Positions 1,684-59,301 of a DNA stretch of 64,000 bases are shown here, piece after piece. The translations under genes were made by a program, and so were the position numbers. Below the pieces are notes generated by a model. It saw only the letters and a program-made list of their open reading frames with translations, searched no databases and was not told the DNA's origin. This stretch comes from Pecten maximus. Taxonomy: Eukaryota. The DNA lies in NCBI RefSeq assembly GCF_902652985.1, contig NC_047016.1, positions 11,408,001 to 11,472,000 on the forward strand, read 5' to 3'. How positions within the stretch are numbered: the first letter of the stretch is position 1; the number at the start of each line of letters is the position of its first letter.

Positions 1684-1931
1684 CTGCAGGAAAGGTGATT
1701 AGGAAGTAGTCAATTAAAACAACTAGAGGGTCTATATTGCTCACTTCAGTATTATCATAAACATGCCAAAATATCCCCCAAACACTAAATACTTAAAAGG
1801 ATGACACATATGTAACACATTTCATGCCTTGTCCATAAGAATTCTTACACTTCGTCATATTGCATGTCTTGTTGAAATATGATTAACTGTTCAATAGCAA
1901 TAGCAGTAATTTTAATAATCCCTGGGTGGGT

Positions 1932-1964
<33 letters not shown>
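1932..1964. repeat. Poly-G run
   Basis: About 33 consecutive G. Confidence 0.9.
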
Positions 1965-3053: not shown

Positions 3054-4247
3054 CTAAAATAAACAAATATCTTATACTCCTCAAATAAATCCATTCAAGA
3101 TATCTATTAGGGAACAATCTGATTTTCAGTAATTGTGCATTACAGCCCGATTTACTGATGATGATCCTGTATCATTTTAAGGAATTTTGTTTATTTTAAA
3201 TAGGCTATGGTTGCATTAACGTTTGCTGAAAAATGCAGAATTACTATTTTAAACCTCACTAGAGTTGACATACTAAGTTTAATTTTTAGACAGGTTGATC
3301 TTGATGTTTAAAATGTCTGACATGTATCTTGATAGACTTCATCATGATTCCCTACGCAGAAGATTCTGGTGAATTTGATTACTGTCCCAGTATATTTTTG
3401 TTCCAAGTTTCTAATGTCATGCATTCAATTTAAGGCTTTTTTTCTCCATATATCAATTTATCTGTATTATTAGATATTTGATCTTTGATAATTTTCTGTA
3501 GAAGACACTTATATCTGTTACTGATAAATTGGCCTACCTTATCTGTTTTGGTGATTTTTTGAATGGCAGATTATGTTACTATAGAAGCATTTCACATTTC
3601 GACTGATTTAAACCATGCAAACTCTTTATAGCTATTGGAATCTCCGTAATGGAATTGAGCAAAGTTTCGTCTCATAATCACTTCAACCAGCTCAAAAAAC
3701 ACAGTCATTTTTGTAGGCCTATTTCATGGAAATAACTCCAGAACCAATCAGTAGTATTCTACTTTCATTTTATGTATCAAATGTAGAAACAATCGGAGAT
3801 TTCACTTATCGCTTACCAATTGGAAAATCCATGACTAATCGATGGGTGAGAACCATTTTTTTTCAACTCAAAGAGGTGAACTCCCCTTGCACAAACCAGA
3901 CAGCAAGCGTAATAATTTGCCACGGAAAATAGTTTGTAATACTCAATGATTGTCTGTGATTTTGAACATTTTTTGTTATTATTTATTCATCTTAAATTGT
4001 CATTAAACATAAAAAAGCAAGAATCATATCATTTATTTACAAACAAATACTTTGCGGAAGGAGATCGTGTATCGTTTGGTTTATTTTGGAAGAAATCATT
4101 CTGTCCTATCCTGAACTTATCAGGATTTTATTTTCTATTGTAGAAATAAGCGGCAATTGATTTCCCCAAAGTGTTCAGAATGAATTTTTCTTCACTGATG
4201 ATAGCTAGAGGTGGCTGTGCAAAGCAAAACATCTAAAAATTGCAATT

Positions 4248-4335
4248 AACTAATCCATGGAACATTGATTTTCTGTACTAATCCATGGAACATTGATTTT
4301 CTGTACTAATCCATGGAACATTGATTTTCTGTACA
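4248..4335. repeat. 29-bp tandem triplication (actaatccatggaacattgattttctgt)
   Basis: Three adjacent copies. Confidence 0.8.
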
Positions 4336-4362
4336 TCAGGAAAGTTTTTCTGGATGTAAATC

Positions 4363-6266
4363 TCTACCCTCCACTCCATTACATACCTATCTCTATATCT
4401 ACCCTCCACTCCATTACATACCTAAGTCGGAGAGCGACCCGCCACGCCCCCAGGACAGATCCGAGCGCGAGAGCGACCCCGCCACCGCCAGGAACCAGAA
4501 CCGAGCGCGATAGCGACCCGGCCCCGGCCAGGACAGACCGAGACTCGATAGCGACCCGCCACCGCCAGGAAGCGGACCGAGCGCGAGAGCGACCCGCCAC
4601 GCCATGACAGACCGAGCGCGAGAGCTACCGCCACGCCAGGACAGACCGAGCGCGAGAGCGACCCGCCACGCCAGGACAGACCGAGCGCGAGAGCGACCCG
4701 CCACGCCAGGACAGACGAGCGCGAGAGCGACCCGCCACGCCAGGACAGACCGAGCGCGAGAGCGACCCGCCACGCCCAGGACAGACCGAGCGCGAGAGCG
4801 ACCCGCCACGCCAGGACAGACCGAGCGCCAGAGCGACCCGCCACGCCAGGACAGACCGAGCGCGAGAGAGCCACCCGCCAGGACAGACCGAGCGCCAGAG
4901 CGACCCGCCACGCCAGGACAGACCGAGCGCCAGAGCGACCCGCCACGCCAGGACAGACCGAGCGCGAGAGCGACCCGCCACGCCAGGACAGACCGAGCGC
5001 GAGAGCGACCCGCCACGCCAGGACGGACCGAGCGCGAGAGCGACCCGCCACGCCAGGACAGACAGAGCGCGAGAGCGACCCGCCACGCCAGGACAGACCG
5101 AGCGCGAGAGCGACCCGCCACGCCAGGACAGACCGAGCGCGAGAGCGACCCGCCACGCCAGGACAGACCGAGCGCGAGAGCGACCCGCCACGCCAGGACA
5201 CACAGAGCGCGAGAGCGACCCGCCACGCCAGGACAGACCGAGCGCGAGAGCGACCCGCCACGCCAGGACAGACCGAGCGCGAAGGCGACCCGCCACGCCA
5301 GGACGGAACGAGCGCGAGAGCGACCCGCCACGCCAGGACAGACCGAGCGCGAGAGCGACCCGCCACGCCAGGACGGACCGAGCGCGAGAGCGACCCGCCA
5401 CGCCAGGACAGACCGAGCGCGAGAGCGACCCGCCACGCCAGGACAGACCGAGCGCGAGAGCGACCCGCCACGCCAGGACAGACCGAGCGCGAGAGCGACC
5501 CGCCACGCCAGGACAGACAGAGCGCGAGAGCGACCCGCCACGCCAGGACAGACCGAGCGCGAGAGCGACCCGCCACGCCAGGACAGACCGAGCGCGAGAG
5601 CGACCCGCCACGCCAGGACAGACCGAGCGCGAAGGCGACCCGCCACGCCAGGACAGAAACGAGCGCGAGAGAGGCCACCCGCCAGGACAGACCGAGCGCG
5701 AAGGCGACCACGCCACGCCCGGACAGACCGAGCGCGCGAGCGACCCCGCCACCACGCCGTACAGAACGAGCGCTAAGAGGCACCCGCCAAGTGACAGACC
5801 GAGCGCGAGCAGCGATCCCGCCACGCCAGTACAGTACAGAGCGCGAGAGGCGACCGCCCTACGCCAGGACAGACCGAGCGCTAGAGCGACCCGCCACGCC
5901 AGGACAGAACGAGCGCGAGAGATCCAACCGACAGGACAGACGAGCGTCGAGAGCGACCCGCCCGCCATGACAGACAGAGCGCTAGAGCGGACCCGCCAAG
6001 CCAGGACAGACCGAGCGCGAAGGCTACCCTCCACGCCCGGGAAAGACGAGCGCGAAGGGACCCGCCAGCCATTACAGACCGAGCGCGATACTCGACCCGC
6101 CACGGCCAGGACAGATCCGAGTCGGCGAATCTACCCTCCACTCCATTACATACCTATCTCTATATCTACCCTCCACTCCATTACATACCTATCTCTATAT
6201 CTACCCTCCACTCCATTACATACCTATCTCTATATCTACCCTCCACTCCATTACTTACCTATCTCT
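4363..6266. repeat. 35-bp minisatellite in RSU1 intron 7 (~54 copies): AT-form at both ends, T->G 'GC-form' in the centre (~4426-6128)
   Basis: Flanking unit ctccattacatacctatctctatatctaccctcca; central unit cgccaggacagaccgagcgcgagagcgacccgcca; same period and register. Confidence 0.95.
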
Positions 6267-6373
6267 GGTGGTAGTACTGTAAGTCTGTTACCCTGGATAT
6301 GCAGCTCCTTGAGGCGAGGCAGTTCTCCCACCTCTTTGGGGAGGGCTATCAGATCGTTGTCTCGCAAAACCAA
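6259..6373 (-). CDS. RSU1: RSU1 coding exon 7
   Basis: [38 protein letters not shown]|gtaagt; 115 nt. Confidence 0.95.
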
Positions 6374-6951
6374 CTACAAAATCAATGTTGATATCTTTAA
6401 CATATCCCGTTCATATCTTGGTTATGAAACCCTTCTTATTTAGATTCCCAACCTTCATGGATTTTTTCACTCAAACAAAGTGGGTATGTAATTAGAATAT
6501 CTATTTACTCAGGTTAACTATGGTTATATTACAAATCATGCTCACATCAATAATTATCTGGGTCCATTTACTCTCCTTTCCAAGAACAGTTACACTGTAG
6601 TACATTATATCCACAAATCCACTATATAACAATCTGAATTCTATCACAAACAAGTTTGAATTCTTTTAATATTACATGAAAAAATGACTCTTTAATGACC
6701 CATAAAAGAAGTCTTGGTAATCAAAACTCACTGAGGCTTGACACACAGTGAAACTCTAATCCTACTTGAAATTAATAAAAAAATTCATATAACACATATT
6801 CTACCTTAAAGCATGTTTCTCATAAAATTTATAAAGTTTATATACAGGTAATTATTGGAGAAATGTTGTGAAACATTAAACACTCCAGTTAGGCACATCA
6901 GTGTTGCTTCCATGACTGTTCACATGATTTCTGAAGTTAGTGGTAACTCAC

Positions 6952-7034
6952 AATTTGAAGGTTCTTCAGTCGACCAATCTCAGGAGGAATGACTTCAAAA
7001 TCGTTATCTCCAAGGTACAGAGCCCTCAACGTAT
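6952..7034 (-). CDS. RSU1: RSU1 coding exon 6
   Basis: DTLRALYLGDNDFEVIPPEIGRLKNLQI|gtgagt; 83 nt. Confidence 0.95.
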
Positions 7035-7289
7035 CTGAAATTAAAACAATGCATTTTAACTCTGCTGTTTTAATGTTTATGCTATACACTGAAGTAGATT
7101 GTGCATGATGTGGGATGATTACCCAAACAATGCTACAATATTGACTTCAAAGATTATCCACAATTGTTTTTAATCATTATGTAAATCACTTTACAGTTTT
7201 CATTGGTAAGTTAAACATGTGTCAACTGATCAAGTTGGAAGAATCAATTAAATTTAATGTAAACAGTCACATTCTCCAATATAGGTCAC

Positions 7290-10200
7290 GTTACTAGCTC
7301 AGACTAGCAGGAATTTCCCTTCACCTCAGTGGTAGGATGTGGAGAGGATCAGACTAGTAGGAATTTCCCTTTACCTCAGAGGTATAGGATGTGGAGAGGA
7401 TCAGACTAGCAGGAATTTCCCTTTACCCCAGTGGTAGGATGTGGAGAGGATCAGACTAGCAGGAATTTCCCTTTACCTTAGAGGTATAGGATGTGGAGAG
7501 GATCAGACTAGTAGGAATTTCCCTTTACCCCAGTGGTAGGATGTGGAGAGGATCAGACTAGTAGGAATTTCCCTTTACCTTAGAGGTATAGGATGTGGAG
7601 AGGATCAGACTAGTAGGAATTTCCCTTTACCCCAGTGGTAGGATGTGGAGAGGATCAGACTAGTAGGAATTTCCCTTTACCCCAGTGGTAGGATGTGGAG
7701 AGGATCAGACTAGTAGGAATTTCCCTTTACCTTAGAGGTATAGGATGTGGAGAGGATCAGACTAGTAGGAATTTCCCTTTACCTTAGAGGTATAGGATGT
7801 GGAGAGGATCAGACTAGTAGGAATTTCTCTTTACCTTAGAGGTATAGGATGTGGAGAGGATCAGACTAGTAGGAATTTCCCTTTACCCCAGTGGTAGGAT
7901 GTGGAGAGGATCAGACTATTAGGAATTTCCCTTTACCTCAGAGGTATAGGATGTGGAGAGGATCAGACTAGTAGGAATTTCCCTTTACCTCAGAGGTATA
8001 GGATGTGGAGAGGATCAGACTAGTAGGAATTTCCCTTTACCTTAGAGGTATAGGATGTGGAGAGGATCAGACTAGTAGGAATTTCCCTTTACCCCAGTGG
8101 TAGGATGTGGAGAGGATCAGACTAGTAGGAATTTCCCTTTACCTCAGTGGTAGGATGTGGAGAGGATCAGACTAGTAGGAATTTCCCTTTACCTCAGAGG
8201 TATAGGATGTGGAGAGGATCAGACTAGTAGGAATTTCCCTTTACCTTAGAGGTATAGGATGTGGAGAGGATCAGACTAGTAGGAATTTCCCTTTACCCCA
8301 GTGGTAGGATGTGGAGAGGATCAGACTAGTAGGAATTTCCCTTTACCTTAGAGGTATAGGATGTGGAGAGGATCAGACTAGTAGGAATTTCCCTTTACCC
8401 CAGTGGTAGGATGTGGAGAGGATCAGACTAGTAGGAATTTCCCTTTACCTCAGTGGTATAGGATGTGGAGAGGATCAGACTAGTAGGAATTTCTCTTTAC
8501 CTTAGAGGTATAGGATGTGGAGAGGATCAGACTAGTAGGAATTTCCCTTTACCCCAGTGGTAGGATGTGGAGAGGATCAGACTAGTAGGAATTTCCCTTT
8601 ACCTTAGAGGTATAGGATGTGGAGAGGATCAGACTAGCAGGAATTTCCTTTACACTAGTGGTAGGATGTGGAGAGGATCAGACTAGTAGGAATTTCCCTT
8701 TACCCCAGTGGTAGGATGTGGAGAGGATCAGACTAGTAGGAATTTCCCTTTACCCCAGTGGTAGGATGTGGAGAGGATCAGACTAGCAGGAATTTCCCTT
8801 TACCTTAGAGGTATAGGATGTGGAGAGGATCAGACTAGCAGGAATTTCCCTTTACCCCAGTGGTAGGATGTGGAGAGGATCAGACTAGTAGGAATTTCCC
8901 TTTACCTCAGTGGTATAGGATGTGGAGAGGATCAGACTAGCAGGAATTTCTCTTTACCTTAGAGGTATAGGATGTGGAGAGGATCAGACTAGTAGGAATT
9001 TCCCTTTACCTCAGTGGTATAGGATGTGGAGAGGATCAGACTAGTAGGAATTTCTCTTTACCTTAGAGGTATAGGATGTGGAGAGGATCAGACTAGTAGG
9101 AATTTCCCTTTACCCCAGTGGTAGGATGTGGAGAGGATCAGACTAGTAGGAATTTCCCTTTACCCCAGTGGTAGGATGTGGAGAGGATCAGACTAGCAGG
9201 AATTTCCCTTCACCTTAGAGGTATAGGATGTGGAGAGGATCAGACTAGCAGGAATTTCCCTTTACCTCAGTGGTAGGATGTGGAGAGGATCAGACTAGTA
9301 GGAATTTCCCTTTACCTCAGAGGTATAGGATGTGGAGAGGATCAGACTAGTAGGAATTTCCCTTTACCTTAGAGGTATAGGATGTGGAGAGGATCAGACT
9401 AGTAGGAATTTCCCTTTACCCCAGTGGTAGGATGTGGAGAGGATCAGACTAGTAGGAATTTCCCTTTACCTTAGAGGTATAGGATGTGGAGAGGATCAGA
9501 CTAGTAGGAATTTCCCTTTACCCCAGTGGTAGGATGTGGAGAGGATCAGACTAGTAGGAATTTCCCTTTACCTCAGTGGTATAGGATGTGGAGAGGATCA
9601 GACTAGTAGGAATTTCTCTTTACCTTAGAGGTATAGGATGTGGAGAGGATCAGACTAGTAGGAATTTCCCTTTACCCCAGTGGTAGGATGTGGAGAGGAT
9701 CAGACTAGTAGGAATTTCCCTTTACCTTAGAGGTATAGGATGTGGAGAGGATCAGACTAGCAGGAATTTCCTTTACACTAGTGGTAGGATGTGGAGAGGA
9801 TCAGACTAGTAGGAATTTCCCTTTACCCCAGTGGTAGGATGTGGAGAGGATCAGACTAGTAGGAATTTCCCTTTACCCCAGTGGTAGGATGTGGAGAGGA
9901 TCAGACTAGCAGGAATTTCCCTTCACCTTAGAGGTATAGGATGTGGAGAGGATCAGACTAGCAGGAATTTCCCTTTACCCCAGTGGTAGGATGTGGAGAG
10001 GATCAGACTAGTAGGAATTTCCCTTTACCTCAGTGGTATAGGATGTGGAGAGGATCAGACTAGCAGGAATTTCTCTTTACCTTAGAGGTATAGGATGTGG
10101 AGAGGATCAGACTAGTAGGAATTTCCCTTTACCTCAGTGGTATAGGATGTGGAGAGGATCAGACTAGTAGGAATTTCTCTTTACCTTAGAGGTATAGGAT

Positions 10201-10970
10201 GTGGAGAGGATCAGACTAGTAGGAATTTCCCTTTACCCCAGTGGTAGGATGTGGAGAGGATCAGACTAGTAGGAATTTCCCTTTACCCCAGTGGTAGGAT
10301 GTGGAGAGGATCAGACTAGCAGGAATTTCCCTTCACCTTAGAGGTATAGGATGTGGAGAGGATCAGACTAGCAGGAATTTCCCTTTACCCCAGTGGTAGG
10401 ATGTGGAGAGGATCAGACTAGTAGGAATTTCCCTTTACCTTAGAGGTATAGGAATGTGGAGAGGATCAGACTAGTAGGAATTTCCCTTTACCCCAGTGGT
10501 AGGATGTGGAGAGGATCAGACTAGCAGGAATTTCCCTTCACCTTAGAGGTATAGGATGTGGAGAGGATCAGACTAGCAGGAATTTCCCTTTACCCCAGTG
10601 GTAGGATGTGGAGAGGATCAGACTAGTAGGAATTTCCCTTTACCTCAGTGGTATAGGATGTGGAGAGGATCAGACTAGCAGGAATTTCTCTTTACCTTAG
10701 AGGTATAGGATGTGGAGAGGATCAGACTAGTAGGAATTTCCCTTTACCTTAGAGGTATAGGATGTGGAGAGGATCAGACTAGCAGGAATTTCCTTTACAC
10801 TAGTGGTAGGATGTGGAGAGGATCAGACTAGTAGGAATTTCCCTTTACCCCAGTGGTAGGATGTGGAGAGGATCAGACTAGTAGGAATTTCCCTTTACCC
10901 CAGTGGTAGGATGTGGAGAGGATCAGACTAGCAGGAATTTCCCTTTACCTTAGAGGTATAGGATGTGGAT
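7290..10970. repeat. 50/52-bp minisatellite (~70 copies) in RSU1 intron 5
   Basis: Unit cagactagtaggaatttccctttacc[ccagtggta|ttagaggtata]ggatgtggagaggat. Confidence 0.97.
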
Positions 10971-13091: not shown

Positions 13092-14951
13092 AGAAGAGGC
13101 CCATGGGCCTTAACGGTCATCTGACAAACACTTACACTCACAGCAGGGACACACACCCCAATCCAGCATTATTACCATAAATTATTTATCGCAGCCAGTT
13201 ATGTTTTAGATCAAATTTGGTTTTTATCCATTTAGCTTGTCCAGGAAGAGCAGCATCATAAAGCAAAATTTTAGCCAAGTTCCCATTTTTGGGGCATGCC
13301 CCTCTGTCCCAATGGGTCAGACAAGACTCATTTATATCAATTAGGATTGCCTTTCCCCAATGATGTTTCATACTAAATATGGTTGTAATCAATTCAGGCA
13401 TTAAGGAGGAATTGCATTTTTAAGAAATGTTTAACCTAAGCGCTCCTTTTGCCCCATCTTTTTTTCCCCAGGGGTCAAACCTGTCTCATTAAAAAATATG
13501 ATTGCCGTCACCTTATGTTTCACATCAAATTTGGTTGTAATCCACCAAAAGGTTAGGGAGGATTAGGATTTAACAGCAAATATTCACCAAAGTTCCCCTT
13601 TTGGGGCCCTGCCCCTCAGGCCCCAGGGGTCACACTAGCCTCGTTTATATAAAATATGACCATCCTTCCCAAAGGATGTTTCACACCATATTTCGTATTA
13701 ATCCACCCAACGGTTAGAGAGAAGTAGGATTTATAGCAAAAATTCACCAAAGTTCCCCTTTTGGGGCCCCGCCCCTCTGGCCCTAGGGGTCAAACCAGCC
13801 TCATTTATATAAAATATGATTGTCCTCCTCCAATGATGTTTCACACCAAATTTGGTAATAATTCACTATGGGTGTTAGGAGGAGTAGGATTTTACAGCAA
13901 AATTTCATCAAAGTTCCCCTTTTGGGGCCCCGCCCCTCTGGCCCCAGGGGCCACACCAGCCTCATTTATATAAAATATGACCACCCTTCACCAATGATGT
14001 TTCACACAATATCTGGTTGAAATCCACCAAAGGGTTAAGGACGAGTAGGATTTTATAGCAAAATTTCATCAAAGTTCCCTTTTTTGGGCCCGTCACTCTG
14101 GCCCCAGGGCTCACACCAGCCTCATTTATATAAAATATGACCACCCTCCCCCAATGATGTTTCACAACATATCTGGTTGAAATCTACTAAAGGGTTAAGG
14201 AGGAGTAGGATTTTATAGCAAAATTTCATCAAAGTTCCCCATTTGGGGCCCCACCCCTCAGGCCCCAGGGGTCACACTAGCCTCATTTATATAAAATATG
14301 ACCGCCCTCCCCAAATGATGTTTCACAACATATCTGGTTGAAATCCACTAAAGGGTTAAGGAGGAGTAGGATTTTATAGCAAAATTTCATCAAAGTTCCC
14401 CATTTGGGGCCCCGCCCCTTAGGCCCTAGTGGTCACACCAGCCTCATTTATATAAAATATGACCGCCCTCCCCAAATGATGTTTCACAACATATCTGGTT
14501 GAAATCCACTAAAGGGTTAAGGAGGAGTAGGATTTCATAGCAAAATTTCATCAAAGTTCCCTTTTTGGGGCCCCGCCCCTCAGGCCCCAGGGGTCACACC
14601 AACTTCATTTATATAAAATATGACCGCCCTCCCCCAATGATGTTTCACACCAAATTTAGTTGTACTCCACCTAAGGGTAAAGGAGGAGTAGGATTTTATA
14701 GCAATATTCACCTAAGTTCCCTTTTTGGGGCCCCGCCCTTCTGGCCCCAGGGGTCAGACCAGCCTCATTTATATAAAATATGATTGCCCTCCCCCAATGA
14801 TGCTTCAAACCAAATTTGGAAGTAATCCACCCAAGCGTTAAGGAGGAGTAGCGTTTTGAAAGAAAAAGTTTACGGACGGCGCACGGCGGACGACGACGGA
14901 CGAAGCACGATGACTATAGGTCATCCTGACCCTTTGGGTCAGATGACCTAA
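13092..14951 (+). mobile_element. Non-autonomous Helentron/HINE (pearl/DINE-1-like) element carrying ~9 tandem 161-bp satellite units
   Basis: 5' gaggcccatgggccttaacggtcatctgac; 161-bp periodic core (aagttccc at about 13590, 13750, 13911, 14072...); (gacg)n microsatellite; 3' hairpin aggtcatcctgaccctttgggtcagatgacct complementary to the 5' ggtcatctgac. Confidence 0.75.
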
Positions 14952-24620: not shown

Positions 24621-26074
24621 TGACCAATCTCTGTCCTATTTGGACATTACCCTTCTTCCATTTAATGGCGCTTAACTCCAAACTTCCTAACCCATATTGT
24701 TTGTCTTCCCTTTGTGGATTATGTAGACCAATTAGATAAGATTCCATGCAGTCGTCCTAGATTTGTAGCATTTCAAAGTGAAAAAAAAAAAAGAAATCAG
24801 ACGGGAGTGATGTCGCACTTCGGCATCATTTCTCATAGGCTAGCTCTCATGGCCAGCAGAGCAAAACAATGCGCTAGCGATCTTTTGATGTACTGCCATG
24901 GATTTTTATGAAACATTTCAGGAGTATTTAAAATATTAAATATATACCTTATTTGGTAGAAAACAGAGACGTACTTCTCAACAAGAATTACGCGTATTTA
25001 TATGTGATTAGTTTTAAGCAAACATTTAAATTTAGCTACAGCAGAAATGTTGAATTTCGTAAAACCAGTATTTCTCAATATTCACTCATTTAAACGAAAA
25101 ATACACGGAAGAAATTATAGAAATTCACGTTATTTAAAGGGTGTGTTTAGATGTCCAAACTAAAATGTAAACTAGACTTCAGGTTTCTTTTGAATACCAC
25201 AGATAGAATCTAAAATGTCAACGCCCACATTCCCTGCATCCCGAATTGCCTGTCACTGGACCATACATTCTAGATGCTATGTCTATTTTGTAATCTGACT
25301 ATATACCAAGTTTGAGGTTTGGACATAACTTTTTGTACAACGGATCTAAATGCAAAACTTAAAGTGAAATGTATTGCTGACGACGACACCGGAACAGAAA
25401 CACCGTAGTCTTGCTTTCGCAACTTTGGTCCCAGTTAACACAAGAGTAGTGATTATTCAGATATCCTCAAACTGACTTAAATGGTGAAATATTAGTAGTT
25501 ATAAACAAATATTAACAAGCTGATCATTTAACCACGTCAATGATATTCCCTGTGGATATTTAGAGATCTTGGACTAGTATTTTTAGTTATTGACCACTAT
25601 CAGAACCACGCCCCCACAATGACACGACTTTAGATGTAATATGTGTCTTTACATGTTCTAGAACTTACATACACCGACATTTTTATCGGGAATCAAACAG
25701 ATTGTTATCGGCTGTACAAATATTATGACGAAGTTCCCATTGATCTCTGCTAAACTGCGATATCTATAGATAAACTTTTGCATCCACACGTGACTGGGAG
25801 GTCAAATGTAGACTTAAATATATTGCTGAACAGATCATAGTACAATAGAAGAGGAATAAAAACAGCGATCTTCTTTTTTTTTATCAAAAAGTGACGCCAT
25901 AAGTGTGCTTTTCACATCCGCTCAATTCTCAAGATAACCTCAACATCTCAGCCGAATTATTATGTAGTATAAATCTTGTTTTAAAAGGCACCAAATGATA
26001 CAAATCAGTCATCATATGTCCATATTACACCATGAACACGGTCAACAGTTTGATTGTTTCCCCGTTTCCCACGT

Positions 26075-27050
26075 TGGACCGACACGAGTCTTTGTGTCCG
26101 GGTTATGTCACTTTGGACCGACGCGGGTTTTATTGTCCAGGTTGTGTCCACTTTGGACCGACGCGGGTCTTAGTGTCCAGGTTATGTCACTTTGGATCGA
26201 CGCGGGTCTTAGTGTCCTGGTTGTGTCCACTTTGGACCGACGCGGGTCTTAGTGTCCAGGTTATGTCCACTTTGGACCGACGCGGGTCTTAGTGTCCAGG
26301 TTGTGTCCACTTTGGACCGACGCGGGTCTTAGTGTCCAGGTTATGTCCACTTTGGACCGACGCGGGTTTTATTGTCCAGGTTGTGTCCACTTTGGACCGA
26401 CGCGGGTCTTAGTGTCCAGGTTGTGTCCACTTTGGACCGACGCGGGTCTTAGTGTCCAGGTTATGTCCACTTTGGACCGACGCGGGTCTTAGTGTCCAGG
26501 TTATGTCCACTTTGGACCGACGCCGGTCTTAGTGTCCAGGTTGTGTCCACTTTGGACCGACGCGGGTCTTAGTGTCCAGGTTGTGTCCACTTTGGACCGA
26601 CGCCGGTCTTAGTGTCCTGGTTGTGTCCACTTTGGACCGACGCGGGTCTTAGTGTCCAGGTTATGTCCACTTTGGACCGACGCGGGTCTTAGTGTCCAGG
26701 TTGTGTCCACTTTGGACCGACGCGGGTCTTAGTGTCCAGGTTGTGTCCACTTTGGACCGACGCGGGTCTTAGTGTCCAGGTTGTGTCCACTTTGGACCGA
26801 CGCGGGTCTTAGTGTCCAGGTTATGTCCACTTTGGACCGACGCGGGTCTTAGTGTCCAGGTTGTGTCCACTTTGGACCGACGCGGGTCTTAGTGTCCAGG
26901 TTATGTCCACTTTGGACCGACGCGGGTCTTAGTGTCCAGGTTATGTCCGCGTCACACCGATGTAGGCCGTAGTATCCAGGTTGTGTCCACTTTGGACCGA
27001 CGCCGGTCTTTGTGTCCAGTTTATGTCCGTGTTAGACTGAGATAGGTCAC
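26075..27050. repeat. 40-bp minisatellite (~24 copies)
   Basis: Unit gtgtccactttggaccgacgcgggtcttagtgtccaggtt. Confidence 0.96.
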
Positions 27051-40323: not shown

Positions 40324-40689
40324 GCATAATGAGAGTACTGCTTCCAACGCAAATGGTTATAAGACAAGATTTCTGCCTGAAAAGGAATATTTACAGTATA
40401 CAGTATGTACATCAGTGCTCCACCTAATTTGTGTTTTAGAGAATTATGAATTAAAATTGGAAAAAAACCCAATTATACTTAAATATTGGCAAAATGCAGA
40501 TATTAGAAATAATCCCTGTAACGTCTGTTGTTAGTCCTTGGTGCTAAGTGTTATCCACTATCATTAGCCAAACATTATAAGTAGGAGACAAATTCAGTAA
40601 AAGAACCACATGTAACTAACTATTTGATTGGTGTCGGGAAAAAAGTCCTGACCAATCACTAAACTGATGTATTTCTTTTGAAGATTACA

Positions 40690-42280
40690 ATTGTGGCCGT
40701 GATTGAGCCTTCAATCATGAGGTGGCCATGACTGAGCCTTCAATCACAATGTGGCCATGACTGAGCCTTCAATCACAAGGTGGCCTTGACTGAGCCTTCA
40801 ATCACAAGGTGGCCTTGACTGAGCCTTCAATCACAAGGTGGCCTTGACTGAACCTTCGATCACAATGTGGCCTTGATTGAGCCTTCGATCACAATGTGGC
40901 CATGACTGAGCCTTCGATCACAATGTGGCCTTGATTGAGCCTTCGATCATAATGTGGCCATGACTGAACCTTCGATCACAATGTGGCCATGACTGAACCT
41001 TCGATCATAATGTGGCCTTGACTGAACCTTCGATCATAATGTGGCCTTGACTGAACCTTCGATCACAATGTGGCCTTGATTGAGCCTTCGATCACAATGT
41101 GGCCATGACTGAGCCTTCGATCACAATGTGGCCTTGATTGAGCCTTCGATCATAATGTGGCCATGACTGAACCTTCGATCACAATGTGGCCATGACTGAA
41201 CCTTCGATCATAATGTGGCCTTGACTGAACCTTCGATCATAATGTGGCCTTGACTGAACCTTCGATCACAATGTGGCCTTGATTGAGCCTTCGATCACAA
41301 TGTGGCCATGACTGAGCCTTCGATCACAATGTGGCCATGACTGAGCATTCGATCACAATGTGGCCATGACTGAGCCTTCGATCACAATGTGGCCATGACT
41401 GAGCCTTCGATCACAATGTGGCCATGACTGAACCTTCGATCACAATGTGGCCATGACTGAGCCTTCGATCACAATGTGGCCATGACTGAGCCTTCGATCA
41501 CAATGTGGCCATGACTGAACCTTCGATCATAATGTGGCCTTGACTGAACCTTCGATCATAATGTGGCCTTGACTGAACCTTCGATCACAATGTGGCCATG
41601 ACTGAGCCTTCGATCACAATGTGGCCATGACTGAGCCTTCGATCACAATGTGGCCTTGATTGAGCCTTCGATCACAATGTGGCCATGACTGAACCTTCGA
41701 TCATAATGTGGCCTTGACTGAACCTTCGATCACAATGTGGCCTTGATTGAGCCTTCGATCACAATGTGGCCATGACTGAACCTTCAATCACAATGTGGCC
41801 TTGACTGAACCTTCGATCACAATGTGGCCATGACTGAACCTTCGATCACAATGTGGCCATGACTGAACCTTCGATCATAATGTGGCCTTGACTGAACCTT
41901 CGATCACAATGTGGCCTTGATTGAGCCTTCGATCATAATGTGGCCATGACTGAACCTTCGATCACAATGTGGCCATGACTGAACCTTCGATCATAATGTG
42001 GCCTTGACTGAACCTTCGATCACAATGTGGCCTTGATTGAGCCTTCGATCACAATGTGGCCATGACTGAGCCTTCGATCACAATGTGGCCATGACTGAGC
42101 ATTCGATCACAATGTGGCCATGACTGAGCCTTCGATCACAATGTGGCCATGACTGAGCCTTCGATCACAATGTGGCCATGACTGAACCTTCGATCACAAT
42201 GTGGCCATGACTGAGCCTTCGATCACAAGGTGGCCTTGATTCAGCCCTCGATCATAATGTGGTTGTGACTGAGCCTTCAA
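40690..42280. repeat. 29-bp minisatellite (~54 copies)
   Basis: Unit gtggcc(a/t)tgactga(g/a)ccttcgatcacaat. Confidence 0.97.
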
Positions 42281-43469: not shown

Positions 43470-43839
43470 CTGAAAAATCCAGAACATTAGACAAGTTACC
43501 ATCCAGTAAGAGAAATGACTTATTTAATATGATCAGGCCATGAACCTAAGATGATATATGTACAAGGAATTCAAAAATAAACTAGGCAGTCAAATGAAAT
43601 ACAGGTTGTTTGGCAAAATCCTACTGGCTCAGGATATATGCTACTCTAAAATAATTCATTGAGATATTAAATTTTGAAATAGATGTTTATCCTCTTTAAT
43701 TTCTTATTGATCCAATTCAATAAAACAACATAGTGTTACCAAAGGAGAAGCCAAACACTTCTTGTAATGTTGTCTGCAAATAAAGTGTGGACAATTCTAA
43801 TACAGACTGATAGGGGCATCGACAAATCTACTGAAAAAA

Positions 43840-44512
43840 GGTATTGACTTCTGTACTACACAAGAGAACTGACACCTCTAGTACACATGGGAGCCAACAT
43901 TTCTAGTACACACAGGTATTGACACTTCTAGAACACATGGGTATTGACACTTCTAGTACACAAAGGTATCGACACTTCTAGTACACAAAGGTATTGACAC
44001 TTCTAGTACACAAAAGTATTGACACTTCTAGTACACAAAGGTATTGACACTTCTAGTACACAAAAGTATTGACACTTCTAGTACACAAAGGTATTGACAC
44101 TTCTAGTACACAAAGGTATCGACACTTCTAGTACACAAAGGTATTGACACTTCTAGTACACAAAAGTATTGACACTTCTAGTACACAAAGGTATTGACAC
44201 TTCTAGTACACAAAGGTATTGACACTTCTAGTACACAAAGGTATTGACACTTCTAGTACACAAAGGTATTGACACTTCTAGTACACAAAGGTATTGACAC
44301 CTCCACTACACATGGGTATTGACACTTCTAGTACACATAGCTATTGACACCTCTAGTATACATGTGTATTGACACTTCTACTACACATGGGTATTGACAC
44401 TTCTAGTACATAATGGGTACTGACACTTCTACTACACATGGGTATTGACACTTCTAGTACACATGGGTATTGACACCTCTAGTACACAAAGGTATTGACA
44501 TCTCTACTACAC
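43840..44512. repeat. 25-bp minisatellite in the ABRACL intron (~27 copies)
   Basis: Unit ggtattgacacttctagtacacaaa. Confidence 0.95.
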
Positions 44513-44779
44513 ACCAGCATTGGAACATATATTACAGAAGGTAGGGTTGGTGCCTAGTGGGTAAGTGAGGGATGGGTGGAAGGACTGCAAACCTGAAAAC
44601 CTTTCTTAAAATTCATTATCAATTCAAAATTAATCAAAAGCTGATATATGTCCTACACACATTGGAATAAATGAATTTGAGAACATAGGTTGGTAATTAA
44701 TATGAAAGTTAAGTTTGATACAATATGTAGGAGGTATATGTCTATTACTATACAAGTTGAACATTGCTGAATGAGGCCA

Positions 44780-57064: not shown

Positions 57065-57782
57065 TTTCTGATTGGTTTCTTTCTTGGGTACGTGGCACAG
57101 TTTCTGATTGGTTAGTACATGTATGGCACAGTTTCAGATTGGTACGTACATGTATGGCAAAGTTTGTGATTGGTTAGTACATGTATGGCACAGTTTGTAA
57201 TTGGTTAGTACATGTATGGCACAGTTTCTGATTGGTTAGTACATGTATGGCACAGTTTCTGATTGGTTAGTACATGTATGGCACATTTTTTGCTTGGTTA
57301 TTACATGTATGGCACAGTTTCTGATTGGTTAGTACATGTATGGCACAGTTTCTGATTGGTTAGTACATGTATGGCACAGTTTCTGATTGGTTACTACAGT
57401 GAATCACATAGTCTCTAATTGATTTCCGAGTGTACACCTTCTGATTGCTCTGGTTCTGAATGATTGCTATCTCTGATTGGTTTCTATATTGTATTCCATG
57501 GTTTCTAATTGGTCTACTCTCTGAATAATTACTATCTCTGATTGGTTTCTATATTGTATTCCATGGTTTCTAATTGGTCTACTCTCTGAATAATTACTAT
57601 CTCTGATTGGTTTCTATAATGTATACCATGGTTTCTGATTGGTCTACTTTTTGAATAATTACTATCTCTGATTGGTTTCTATTATTGTATTCCATGGTTT
57701 CTGATTGGTTTACTTTTTGAATAATTACTATTTGTGATTGGTTTCTATATTGTTTACCATGGTTTCTGATTGGTCTACTTTC
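57065..57782. repeat. Compound minisatellite: 31-bp units (57093-57400) then ~65-bp units (57460-57782), all containing ct(g/a)attgg
   Basis: Units tggcacagtttctgattggttagtacatgta and ctatctctgattggtttctatattgtattccatggtttctaattggtctactctctgaataatta. Confidence 0.9.
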
Positions 57783-59301
57783 TGAAGGTTACTGTGGTAC
57801 AGGTTTATCCTCATCTGGTTATCTAGTCAGTCTCCAGATCTCTATGGATGTTGTTCTCACAGCTGGACACCCTGTACTAGGAGCCATCTATCTGTTTCTC
57901 ATGTGTTTCAATCTAACTGAGCGACTTGTGTTTACTGGTCATGACCAGTAGCTGAAGGAATAGTTTAATTCCTGATTGTAGTTCAACACTGCCTCTTGTT
58001 CTGATCATGATCATGACCCAGTCTCTACTCAAGAATTACTGATCAACAGCTGAGGGTAGTTGTACCCAGCCTCTCAGCAATGGAACTCGGGAAGGGAAGA
58101 CCTTAGAGTATCTAAAAAAGGGGATTTTTGTAATTTTGGAACAGTTTGTTATCAATATTCTGCATAAAAATGAATGAATATAAGCTTATTAAAAGATATA
58201 GAGTAGAGCAGTTGAACTAATGATAGAGGGAAAAAAGTTGATAAAGGCAAAATTTTCTAAAATTACCCAGTCTACATGCTTGACAGTTCACTGATGTATT
58301 CTGTGAATTTGTCTTAGGGATCAATCAGGTCACTCTGATTATTAAAACAGATTAAACAAATGTAAGATTTTAATCTTAAAAGATTTTGATGATTTTCCCT
58401 AAAGGGACCAACAGTGGTGTACAACTAATGAAAAACATACACATGTAAGACATTGTCAGGGACTGATCACTTCAAACAAGGATGCTAGGGATAGCTCATT
58501 GGCTTGTATCTCTAGTGTTGTGAGACCAGCCAACCTTACTGTCAGAAGGTCATATGTATATAAACTGACACCCAGCCATTGTGTCGACACATGCATGCCA
58601 CACTATCCACTACAACTCTCCTGGGAGGAAAATGCTTACATGGCATTATTGATTAAAATTCTTACTAGGAAATTTTGTCCACATAAAGAGTTTTTTCGTT
58701 ACTTTGACAATTTCTTGAAAAAACATAATTTGTGAAGCAATATTGATTCTGTATAATATACATAATTACAAAAATGGAAATTGTTTCCATCTTCTGACAA
58801 GCTATTTCCTTTCAATTTTACAAGACAAGACCTATGTATATATAGATACATAAGAAATACATTGTGTTTGGATGCTTGTTTATTTAAAATGTTTGAATGT
58901 TTCATCAACAGCCTTATGGCCATTTAAGGACAGCCTAATTTTTAATTAGTCACCTCTTGTAATTCATGCAATGGGGGCAGCTGGTTCACTTGATAAATTG
59001 AGCTTGACCATTGGTCATTGTCTATATATATGGCCATGTGTTTGTTAGGCATTTCTGGGAAATCTACGTTATGTAAAGAGGTTTTCAATCATAAATCATG
59101 TATTCAGGTGATTGGTATGTGTAGTATTTGTTTTATTGATGAGGTTTTTGTTAAAATGTGATTTAGTAGAATTGTGTCTCTGTACTGTATGTGATAAAAC
59201 TATAGAAATAGTTTATTATAATCTATAAATTTTAACATAAAACAGAATTTGAAGAGGTAAAAGTCCTTTTTTTGCATGATTACATTGAAATCTAACTTTA
59301 A

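What the first reader, a model, noticed from the sequence alone, without database searches (positions are those of the whole stretch)
4363..6266. A 1.7-kb GC-rich array is a letter-for-letter T->G transliteration of the G-free repeat flanking it
Seen: the flanking 35-bp unit ctccattacatacctatctctatatctaccctcca contains no G. The central ~48 units read cgccaggacagaccgagcgcgagagcgacccgcca: every T is replaced by G, A and C are unchanged, and period and phase are the same (A->C on the - strand). The transition zones (~4426-4630 and ~5650-6128) are indel-rich and keep scattered T's (gccatgacag, ccattacagacc, ggctaccctccacg). Established: ADAR (A->G) and APOBEC or RIP (C->T) give transitions; I know no process giving complete T->G conversion. 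Inference: most likely a long-read base-calling failure on three-letter sequence. With G absent on one strand and C absent on the other, T/G and A/C could be confused, and both strands would give the same wrong consensus. The less likely, more exciting alternative is a real hypermutation or a dense base modification misread by the sequencer.
Basis: partly seen in the sequence, partly recalled or inferred. Interest (0 to 1): 0.9.

Follow-up and report, generated by a model that had tools for sequence, protein, structure and literature searches.

The report
Base-calling artefact in a three-letter minisatellite
The 1.7-kb GC-rich array is almost certainly not real DNA: it is a PacBio Sequel long-read error that wrote every T as G inside a G-free 35-bp minisatellite, and the same error turns telomere-type repeats elsewhere in this scallop assembly into TTCGGG.

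Summary
With T and G treated as equivalent, window 4363-6266 aligns end to end to one 35-bp G-free unit: 542 T positions read G, 90 stay T, and A and C are unchanged. The core has no T for 1,133 bases.

- **Source:** the genome's exact size (918,306,378 bp, 3,983 scaffolds) matches the published Pecten maximus assembly. That assembly used PacBio Sequel 1 continuous long reads, then Arrow and Illumina polishing.
- **Independent reads:** contigs of four public DNA runs (three samples, three studies) cover the left flank. They hold the AT-form at 8-145 times flank depth, against 3.7 predicted by the assembly. None lies on the GC-form.
- **Prediction tested:** the three-letter telomere repeat should show the complementary swap. 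It does: (TTCGGG)n blocks sit inside (TTAGGG)n arrays on two other scaffolds, with the same edge-and-core layout.
- **Literature:** another Sequel I assembly lists TTTCGGG as a telomere "variant", and some plant genome papers count CCCGAAA as a telomere word.

The real feature is an ordinary, copy-number-variable minisatellite that starts at the 5' splice site of an RSU1-like exon. Biological interest is low, but the result is a useful quality warning.

The parts
4363..4425 (+). Left edge of the array in its true (AT-form, G-free) spelling, 1.8 units
   Evidence: Covered by read-set contigs at 315-1900x word depth in four runs.
4426..4630 (+). Left transition zone: mostly GC-form, indel-rich, 7 surviving T
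   Evidence: Zero contig depth from 4446 onward in all four runs.
4631..5650 (+). Core of the artefact: about 29 units in which every T is written G, with no T at all
   Evidence: Zero contig depth 4631-4790.
5651..6128 (+). Right transition zone: GC-form with indels and 20 surviving T
6129..6266 (+). Right edge of the array in AT-form, 3.9 units. Its last 8 bases (6259-6266) are the end of the exon on the - strand.
6259..6373 (-). Leucine-rich-repeat exon (RSU1-like). Its last 8 bases plus the GT donor are what the minisatellite unit reiterates.
   Evidence: Translation. The best single-stretch PDB match is Ras suppressor protein 1, residues 168-205, 88 bits. Junction read.

Best explanation
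The GC-rich array is an error in the assembly, not DNA that exists in the animal. The real locus is a G-free 35-bp minisatellite, written AT-form throughout. It has at least about 54 units, probably more, and sits in an intron directly after a 5' splice site.

The PacBio Sequel 1 continuous long reads were base-called wrongly once the polymerase had spent some hundreds of bases in template lacking one letter. T was called G on the G-free strand and A was called C on the C-free strand. Both read orientations therefore agreed on the same wrong consensus.

Arrow polishing kept this consensus because the long reads supported it. Illumina polishing could not repair it, because AT-form short reads do not align to a consensus that differs at every third base. 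Only the outer 63 and 138 bases, within reach of 150-base reads anchored in unique flank, are clean AT-form. The transition zones are where correct and swapped reads, or partial polishing, mix.

Shown: the letter swap, its absence from independent reads, its recurrence at other three-letter arrays, and the sequencing platform.

Inferred: that the swap arose in the base caller. From my own recollection, not verified here, Sequel 1 separates four bases by two colours times two amplitudes, with T/G sharing one colour and A/C the other. A stretch lacking one member of a pair would then leave the amplitude calibration ambiguous.
For: (1) The swap is letter-for-letter, with period and A/C content kept.

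That assembly was made from Sequel 1 reads at 65.9x with wtdbg2 and Arrow, then polished with freebayes using 10X/HiSeq X reads.

(3) The five best DNA holders of window 3800-6800 hold only 0.37-0.43 of its sampled words. The share of 31-mers lying outside the swapped block is 0.42 by position and 0.52 by distinct word.

(4) I laid contigs of four runs (three samples, three studies) on 3800-4790. The flank is covered at about 12-38x. The AT-form cycle contig has depth 315-1900x. All ten bins 4446-4790 are zero in every run.

(5) Depth can be calibrated on the neighbouring 28-bp repeat. It predicts a ratio of 2.0 and shows 1.5-3.5. The AT-form predicts 3.7 if the assembly is right and 21.5 if the block is back-converted. 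The observed ratios are 120 and 145 (sample S1), 8.3 and 12-23.

(6) An A>T variant present in the last true unit (6250) reappears in the core as A>G, which is a natural variant then swapped.

(7) Prediction tested: (CCCGAA)5 with at most 1 mismatch occurs 420 times in the genome, and the reversed control 0 times. On scaffold C3006 a TTAGGG array switches to TTCGGG and back. On C3707 a 2.3-kb TTCGGG core without a single A is bordered by mixed and canonical TTAGGG edges.

(8) A Sequel I assembly of Plantago ovata lists TTTCGGG among telomere 'variants'. Several plant genome papers count CCCGAAA together with CCCTAAA as telomere words.
Against: - The raw PacBio reads were not available, so I did not see the swap in reads.
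- The read evidence is from assembled contigs. The tool warns that these show presence, not absence, and only 345 bases of the GC-form could be laid.
- It is not proven that any laid sample is the assembled individual. S1 fits best, with the fewest differences, three equal runs and the year 2019.
- The swap is not deterministic. A 1.6-kb (TAG)n array on C509 is not converted. About 0.8-0.9 kb of TTAGGG on C3006 and C11 stays canonical.
- A simple 'flips until the missing letter returns' model does not explain the asymmetric C3006 array.
- I found no paper describing the two-colour, two-amplitude mechanism.
- AT-form depth in S1 exceeds even the back-converted assembly. Either the array is also collapsed, or the second haplotype is much longer, or an unassembled copy exists.
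Confidence: 0.88

Rival explanations
1. The swap was introduced by consensus or polishing software (wtdbg2 consensus, Arrow, freebayes edits) and not by the base caller. The raw reads spell the AT-form.
For: Arrow-type consensus is common to this assembly and to the Plantago assembly that shows TTTCGGG. The transition zones look like poorly polished consensus.
Against: To my knowledge these tools have no letter-specific bias. They can only write G where reads carry G. Freebayes edits come from Illumina reads, which spell the AT-form. The swap pairs T with G and A with C exactly, which points to signal classification and not to alignment.
Confidence: 0.05
2. It is an artefact with a biological trigger. 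A dense base modification or a stable non-B structure in long three-letter arrays disturbs the polymerase or signal so that the caller mislabels T. The swapped block would then mark a real chemical state of the DNA.
For: Illumina reads cannot exclude it, because a modified T would still be read as T. Not all three-letter arrays are converted, so something beyond composition may matter.
Against: The same swap affects an intronic minisatellite and telomere-type arrays in a scallop. It also appears in plant assemblies. This argues for an instrument cause. A template modification changes kinetics, not the identity of the labelled nucleotide incorporated (established knowledge of SMRT sequencing, from memory).
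Confidence: 0.04
3. The GC-form is real: a private allele created by a complete T->G conversion of the central units in the assembled individual. It is missed by short reads because of its 74% G+C.
For: None positive. Absence from contigs is not proof of absence (warnings). The identity of the laid samples with the assembled animal is not proven.
Against: No known process gives complete strand-consistent T->G transversion. The core has 0 T among 1,133 bases although it carries other variants. AT-form depth exceeds the assembly's AT-form copy number 33-39 fold in S1. The complementary swap occurs at unrelated loci.
Confidence: 0.02

Closest known systems
Repeat-calling errors in nanopore sequencing of telomeres (Genome Biol 2022, PMC9414165)
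   Same: A long-read base caller rewrites a short tandem repeat wholesale into another repeat of the same period. The error is systematic and is seen across datasets.
   Different: It is a different platform and a different cause (neural-network caller on current signal). From memory, the nanopore errors differ between the two strands and so do not reinforce each other. Here the two strand-specific swaps (T->G, A->C) are complementary and give one consistent wrong consensus that survives polishing.
TTTCGGG / CCCGAAA 'telomere variants' in PacBio plant assemblies (Plantago ovata, Sequel I, PMC9883528; telomere word lists in PMC12239627, PMC11649558, PMC13150303)
   Same: It is exactly the same letter swap (A->C on the G-rich strand, T->G on the C-rich strand) in a three-letter repeat. 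One of these assemblies comes from the same instrument model.
   Different: Those papers treat the words as variants or canonical telomere words and do not call them errors. None concerns a non-telomeric minisatellite. I did not check those assemblies or their reads.
Enzymatic hypermutation (APOBEC, ADAR, fungal RIP)
   Same: One letter is changed many times in a stretch of sequence.
   Different: Those give transitions, depend on sequence context and are incomplete. Here a transversion is complete in the core, absent from independent reads and confined to sequence lacking the target letter.

Membership tests
Long-read repeat base-calling artefact | The altered spelling is absent from reads of an independent platform while the canonical spelling is present in excess | tested here: met
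   zero contig depth on 4446-4790 in four runs. AT-form is at 8-145x flank depth against 3.7 predicted. Caveat: these are contigs, not raw reads, and only part of the block could be laid.
Long-read repeat base-calling artefact | Same period and register as the adjoining canonical repeat, differing by a fixed letter substitution | tested here: met
   542 T>G, A and C kept, one continuous alignment over 4363-6266.
Long-read repeat base-calling artefact | Recurs at unrelated loci of the same assembly with the same substitution rule | tested here: met
   TTCGGG blocks inside TTAGGG arrays on C3006 and C3707.
Long-read repeat base-calling artefact | Present in the raw long reads, in both orientations, before consensus | not testable with these tools
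   No PacBio run was among the runs served.
Enzymatic hypermutation (APOBEC / ADAR / RIP) | Transition mutations (C->T or A->G) with context preference and partial penetrance | tested here: not met
   the change is a T->G transversion. It reaches 100% in the core and is independent of neighbouring bases.
Minisatellite (the real underlying feature) | Head-to-tail array of a 10-100 bp unit with copy number varying between individuals | tested here: met
   (period 35, about 54 units); the ratio of AT-form depth to flank depth differs between samples (8, 12-23, 120-145).

The most novel reading that the evidence does not exclude
The swapped block marks something real in the DNA. Either a dense thymine modification or a non-B structure in long three-letter arrays provokes the miscall, or, far less likely, there is a true private allele with complete T->G conversion.
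Probability: 0.05. Interest if true: 0.7.

Novelty: not a real feature. Interest (0 to 1): 0.15.

Why it matters
As biology it does not matter: the animal carries an ordinary G-free minisatellite.

As quality control it matters more. A public chromosome-level reference holds kilobase blocks of invented CpG-rich sequence. These would be scored as GC-rich or CpG-island-like repeats, and telomere-type arrays are spelled TTCGGG.

The rule is simple: long arrays lacking one letter, with T->G or A->C. Such blocks can therefore be found by looking for a repeat whose letter-swapped image lies beside it. Literature hints suggest the same error sits unrecognised in other PacBio Sequel assemblies, where it has been read as telomere sequence variation.

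I found no paper that states this plainly, so a short technical note might be useful.

Tried and rejected
- **Read laying on the whole block (3800-6800):** Only 3800-4790 could be laid, so the right half of the array was not examined with reads.
- **Earlier findings of this scan:** searches by words and by place gave nothing on this locus.
- **Third repeat family:** I looked for (TCG)n as the image of (TAG)n. It has 682 hits, but the reversed control is also frequent. The loci inspected are short natural (GAC)n/(GAT)n compound microsatellites, so the test is uninformative.
- **Sequel two-colour, two-amplitude design:** three literature searches found no source for it or for a published description of this error. 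The mechanism rests on memory.
- **Catfish paper (PMC10071708):** it contains the hexamer only inside an unrelated 102-bp repeat.
- **Cinnamomum paper (PMC11068913):** it contains the word only inside a centromere unit.
- **Illumina G+C dropout as the reason for zero depth:** considered and rejected. It cannot explain the 33-39-fold excess of AT-form words in S1.

Full report
**Observation.** Positions 4363-4425 and 6129-6266 carry a 35-bp unit without G. Between them lie about 48 units of the same period (Tandem Repeats Finder: 47.9 copies at 4430-6121), with G wherever the flanking unit has T.

Positions 4631-5650 hold C 409, G 347, A 264 and no T, and contain 15 exact copies of the T->G image of the unit. 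I aligned 4363-6266 to a tandem of the AT-form unit, scoring reference T against query G as a match. The alignment runs through the whole stretch: 724 C and 465 A unchanged, 542 T read as G, 90 T kept, 42 other substitutions and 65 indel columns.

In bins 4678-5622 not one T is kept. Surviving T's and nearly all indels lie in 4426-4630 and 5650-6128. The T-free run 4627-5759 (1,133 bp) and the right AT-form block are the only one-letter-free runs of 80 bp or more in the window. Both spellings occur nowhere else in the genome.

**Origin of the sequence.** The genome behind the window has 918,306,378 bases in 3,983 pieces. These figures are identical to those published for the king scallop Pecten maximus assembly (PMC7191990).

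That paper states that the contigs were built with wtdbg2 from PacBio Sequel 1 reads at 65.9x. They were then polished with Arrow. Further polishing used freebayes with 10X Chromium libraries read on HiSeq X, applying homozygous non-reference edits only. The consensus in a long repeat therefore rests on raw continuous long reads. Short reads can correct it only where they align.

**Independent reads.** The run search found five DNA runs from three samples and three studies that hold part of window 3800-6800. None holds more than 0.43 of its sampled words. The share of 31-mers outside the swapped block is 0.42 by position and 0.52 by distinct word. These runs therefore hold no more than the flanks and the AT-form can supply.

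In all four runs:
- contigs cover the unique left flank at about 12-38x word depth;
- a 56-65-bp cyclic contig of the AT-form has depth 315 to 1,900;
- every bin from 4446 to 4790 is empty.

One 1,113-bp contig of run X1 starts in the AT-form and runs on into sequence like the right flank.

Depth can be calibrated on the perfect 28-bp repeat at 4249-4334. Its cyclic words occur 2.0 times in the assembly and show 1.5-3.5 times flank depth. The AT-form words occur 3.7 times in the assembly as written and 21.5 times if the block is back-converted. They show 120 and 145 times flank depth in sample S1, 8.3 in X3 and 12-23 in X5.

S1 has the fewest differences from the window. It consists of several equal runs of 2019, as do the four 10X runs in the paper's Table 1, so it is probably the assembled animal. 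Because ids are coded this is an inference.

The tool warns that contigs show presence and not absence, and only 345 bases of the GC-form could be laid. The excess of AT-form words does not depend on an absence.

**A prediction.** If the cause is base calling in sequence lacking one letter, other three-letter repeats of this assembly should show it. The telomere repeat is such a sequence: TTAGGG lacks C and CCCTAA lacks G.

Five units of CCCGAA, with at most one mismatch, occur 420 times in the genome. The pattern read backwards occurs 0 times.
- **Scaffold C3006:** an interstitial array reads TTAGGG for 800 bp, switches to TTCGGG for about 550 bp, then returns through a mixed zone to TTAGGG before unique sequence (locus L016).
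- **Scaffold C3707:** a 2.6-kb array has a mixed left edge of about 250 bp, a core of about 2.3 kb of TTCGGG without a single A, and 86 bp of canonical repeat at the right edge (locus L031).

This is the complementary swap (A->C) with the same anatomy as the finding: canonical edges, a noisy transition and a fully converted core.

Short arrays are untouched (120 bp in L031). So are some longer ones: about 0.9 kb on C11 and a 1.6-kb (TAG)n array on the small contig C509. The error therefore needs length and is not deterministic.

**Literature.** An analogous error is documented for nanopore reads of telomeres (PMC9414165). For PacBio I found no explicit description, but there are traces.
- A Sequel I continuous-long-read assembly of Plantago ovata reports TTTCGGG among telomeric "variants" (PMC9883528).
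- Several plant genome papers define telomeres by the words CCCGAAA and CCCTAAA together.

CCCGAAA is the T->G image of the plant telomere word. These are leads. I did not examine those assemblies.

**Mechanism.** Shown:
- the swap is a pure relabelling of one letter, complementary on the two strands;
- it is confined to long stretches lacking the letter that is written in;
- it is absent from independent reads;
- it recurs in this Sequel 1 assembly.

Inferred: the relabelling happened in the instrument's base caller. From memory, and not confirmed by any source found here, Sequel 1 distinguishes the four labelled nucleotides by two colours and two amplitudes, with T and G sharing one colour and A and C the other. 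The caller re-estimates the amplitude classes over blocks of time.

A block containing only one member of a pair would leave the assignment ambiguous. That would explain three things: why exactly T/G and A/C are confused, why some hundreds of bases are needed, and why both orientations give the same wrong double-stranded consensus.

Arrow would keep what the reads say. Freebayes could repair only what 150-base reads anchored in unique flank can reach. This fits the clean AT-form edges of 63 and 138 bases here and 86 bases on C3707. The asymmetric C3006 array is not explained by this simple picture.

**What is really there.** On the minus strand an exon at 6259-6373 encodes leucine-rich repeats. 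Its best single-stretch match among solved structures is Ras suppressor protein 1, residues 168-205, at 88 bits.

The exon ends in an 8-base word followed by a consensus GTAAGT donor. Every unit of the array repeats that 8-base word followed by GTATGT. The real feature is thus a minisatellite seeded at a 5' splice site.

Other first-stage notes on this genome describe the same kind of array at other genes. I confirmed only this instance. Its unit number differs several-fold between the samples laid.

**Rivals.** I considered three rival explanations:
- software other than the base caller introduced the swap;
- a real modification or structure triggers the miscall;
- the GC-form is a true private allele.

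All three are given with their tests in the structured fields. Together I give them about one chance in ten.

**Verdict.** The GC-rich array is not a real feature. Interest is low as biology. It is of practical use as a recognisable error class in assemblies of that instrument generation.

Noticed in passing
window 6129-6266 with exon 6259-6373 (- strand): The minisatellite unit repeats the last 8 bases of an RSU1-like LRR exon plus a GT donor (GTAAGT in the first unit, GTATGT in the rest). The array is therefore seeded at the 5' splice site and offers a donor-like site every 35 bases.
   Followed up: partly
L016 (G000:C3006:185986-189015) 700-2255; L031 (G000:C3707:17000-26900) 5494-8126: These interstitial TTAGGG arrays have central blocks spelled TTCGGG (A->C), 0.55 kb and 2.3 kb long. 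This is the same error class as the finding. (CCCGAA)5 matches 420 times genome-wide.
   Followed up: yes
L032 (G000:C509:1-5068): This 5-kb unplaced contig is made of a noisy 1.6-kb (TAG)n array that is not letter-swapped. A telomere-like part follows in which most A's are missing (period-5 GGGTT) and a few TTCGGG occur. It looks like poorly supported consensus.
   Followed up: partly
window 4249-4334: A perfect 28-bp x 3.1 tandem repeat lies directly left of the array. Its read depth (1.5-3.5x flank) agrees with the assembly, so it served as an internal control.
   Followed up: yes
window 7299-10969: A large four-letter tandem array (52/102-bp unit, about 72 copies, G-skewed) lies about 1 kb from the finding in the same gene region. 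Its spelling looks normal, as expected if only three-letter arrays are affected.
   Followed up: no
window 1924-1963: There is a run of about 35 G in otherwise AT-rich sequence. I did not check whether it is real or another calling or polishing problem.
   Followed up: no
window about 6254-6268, table 7 (run X1, loose end at 4424): The consensus of two contigs leaving the AT-form differs from the window's right flank in three of five letters at the exon end (AGAGC against GGTGG). This may be a second haplotype, a paralogue or a tie in a two-contig consensus. It is unexplained.
   Followed up: no
window 13262-14851, 26069-27028, 40683-42278, 43837-44513, 57093-57786: The window is unusually rich in minisatellites with units of 25-161 bp and up to 55 copies. 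All use four letters.
   Followed up: no
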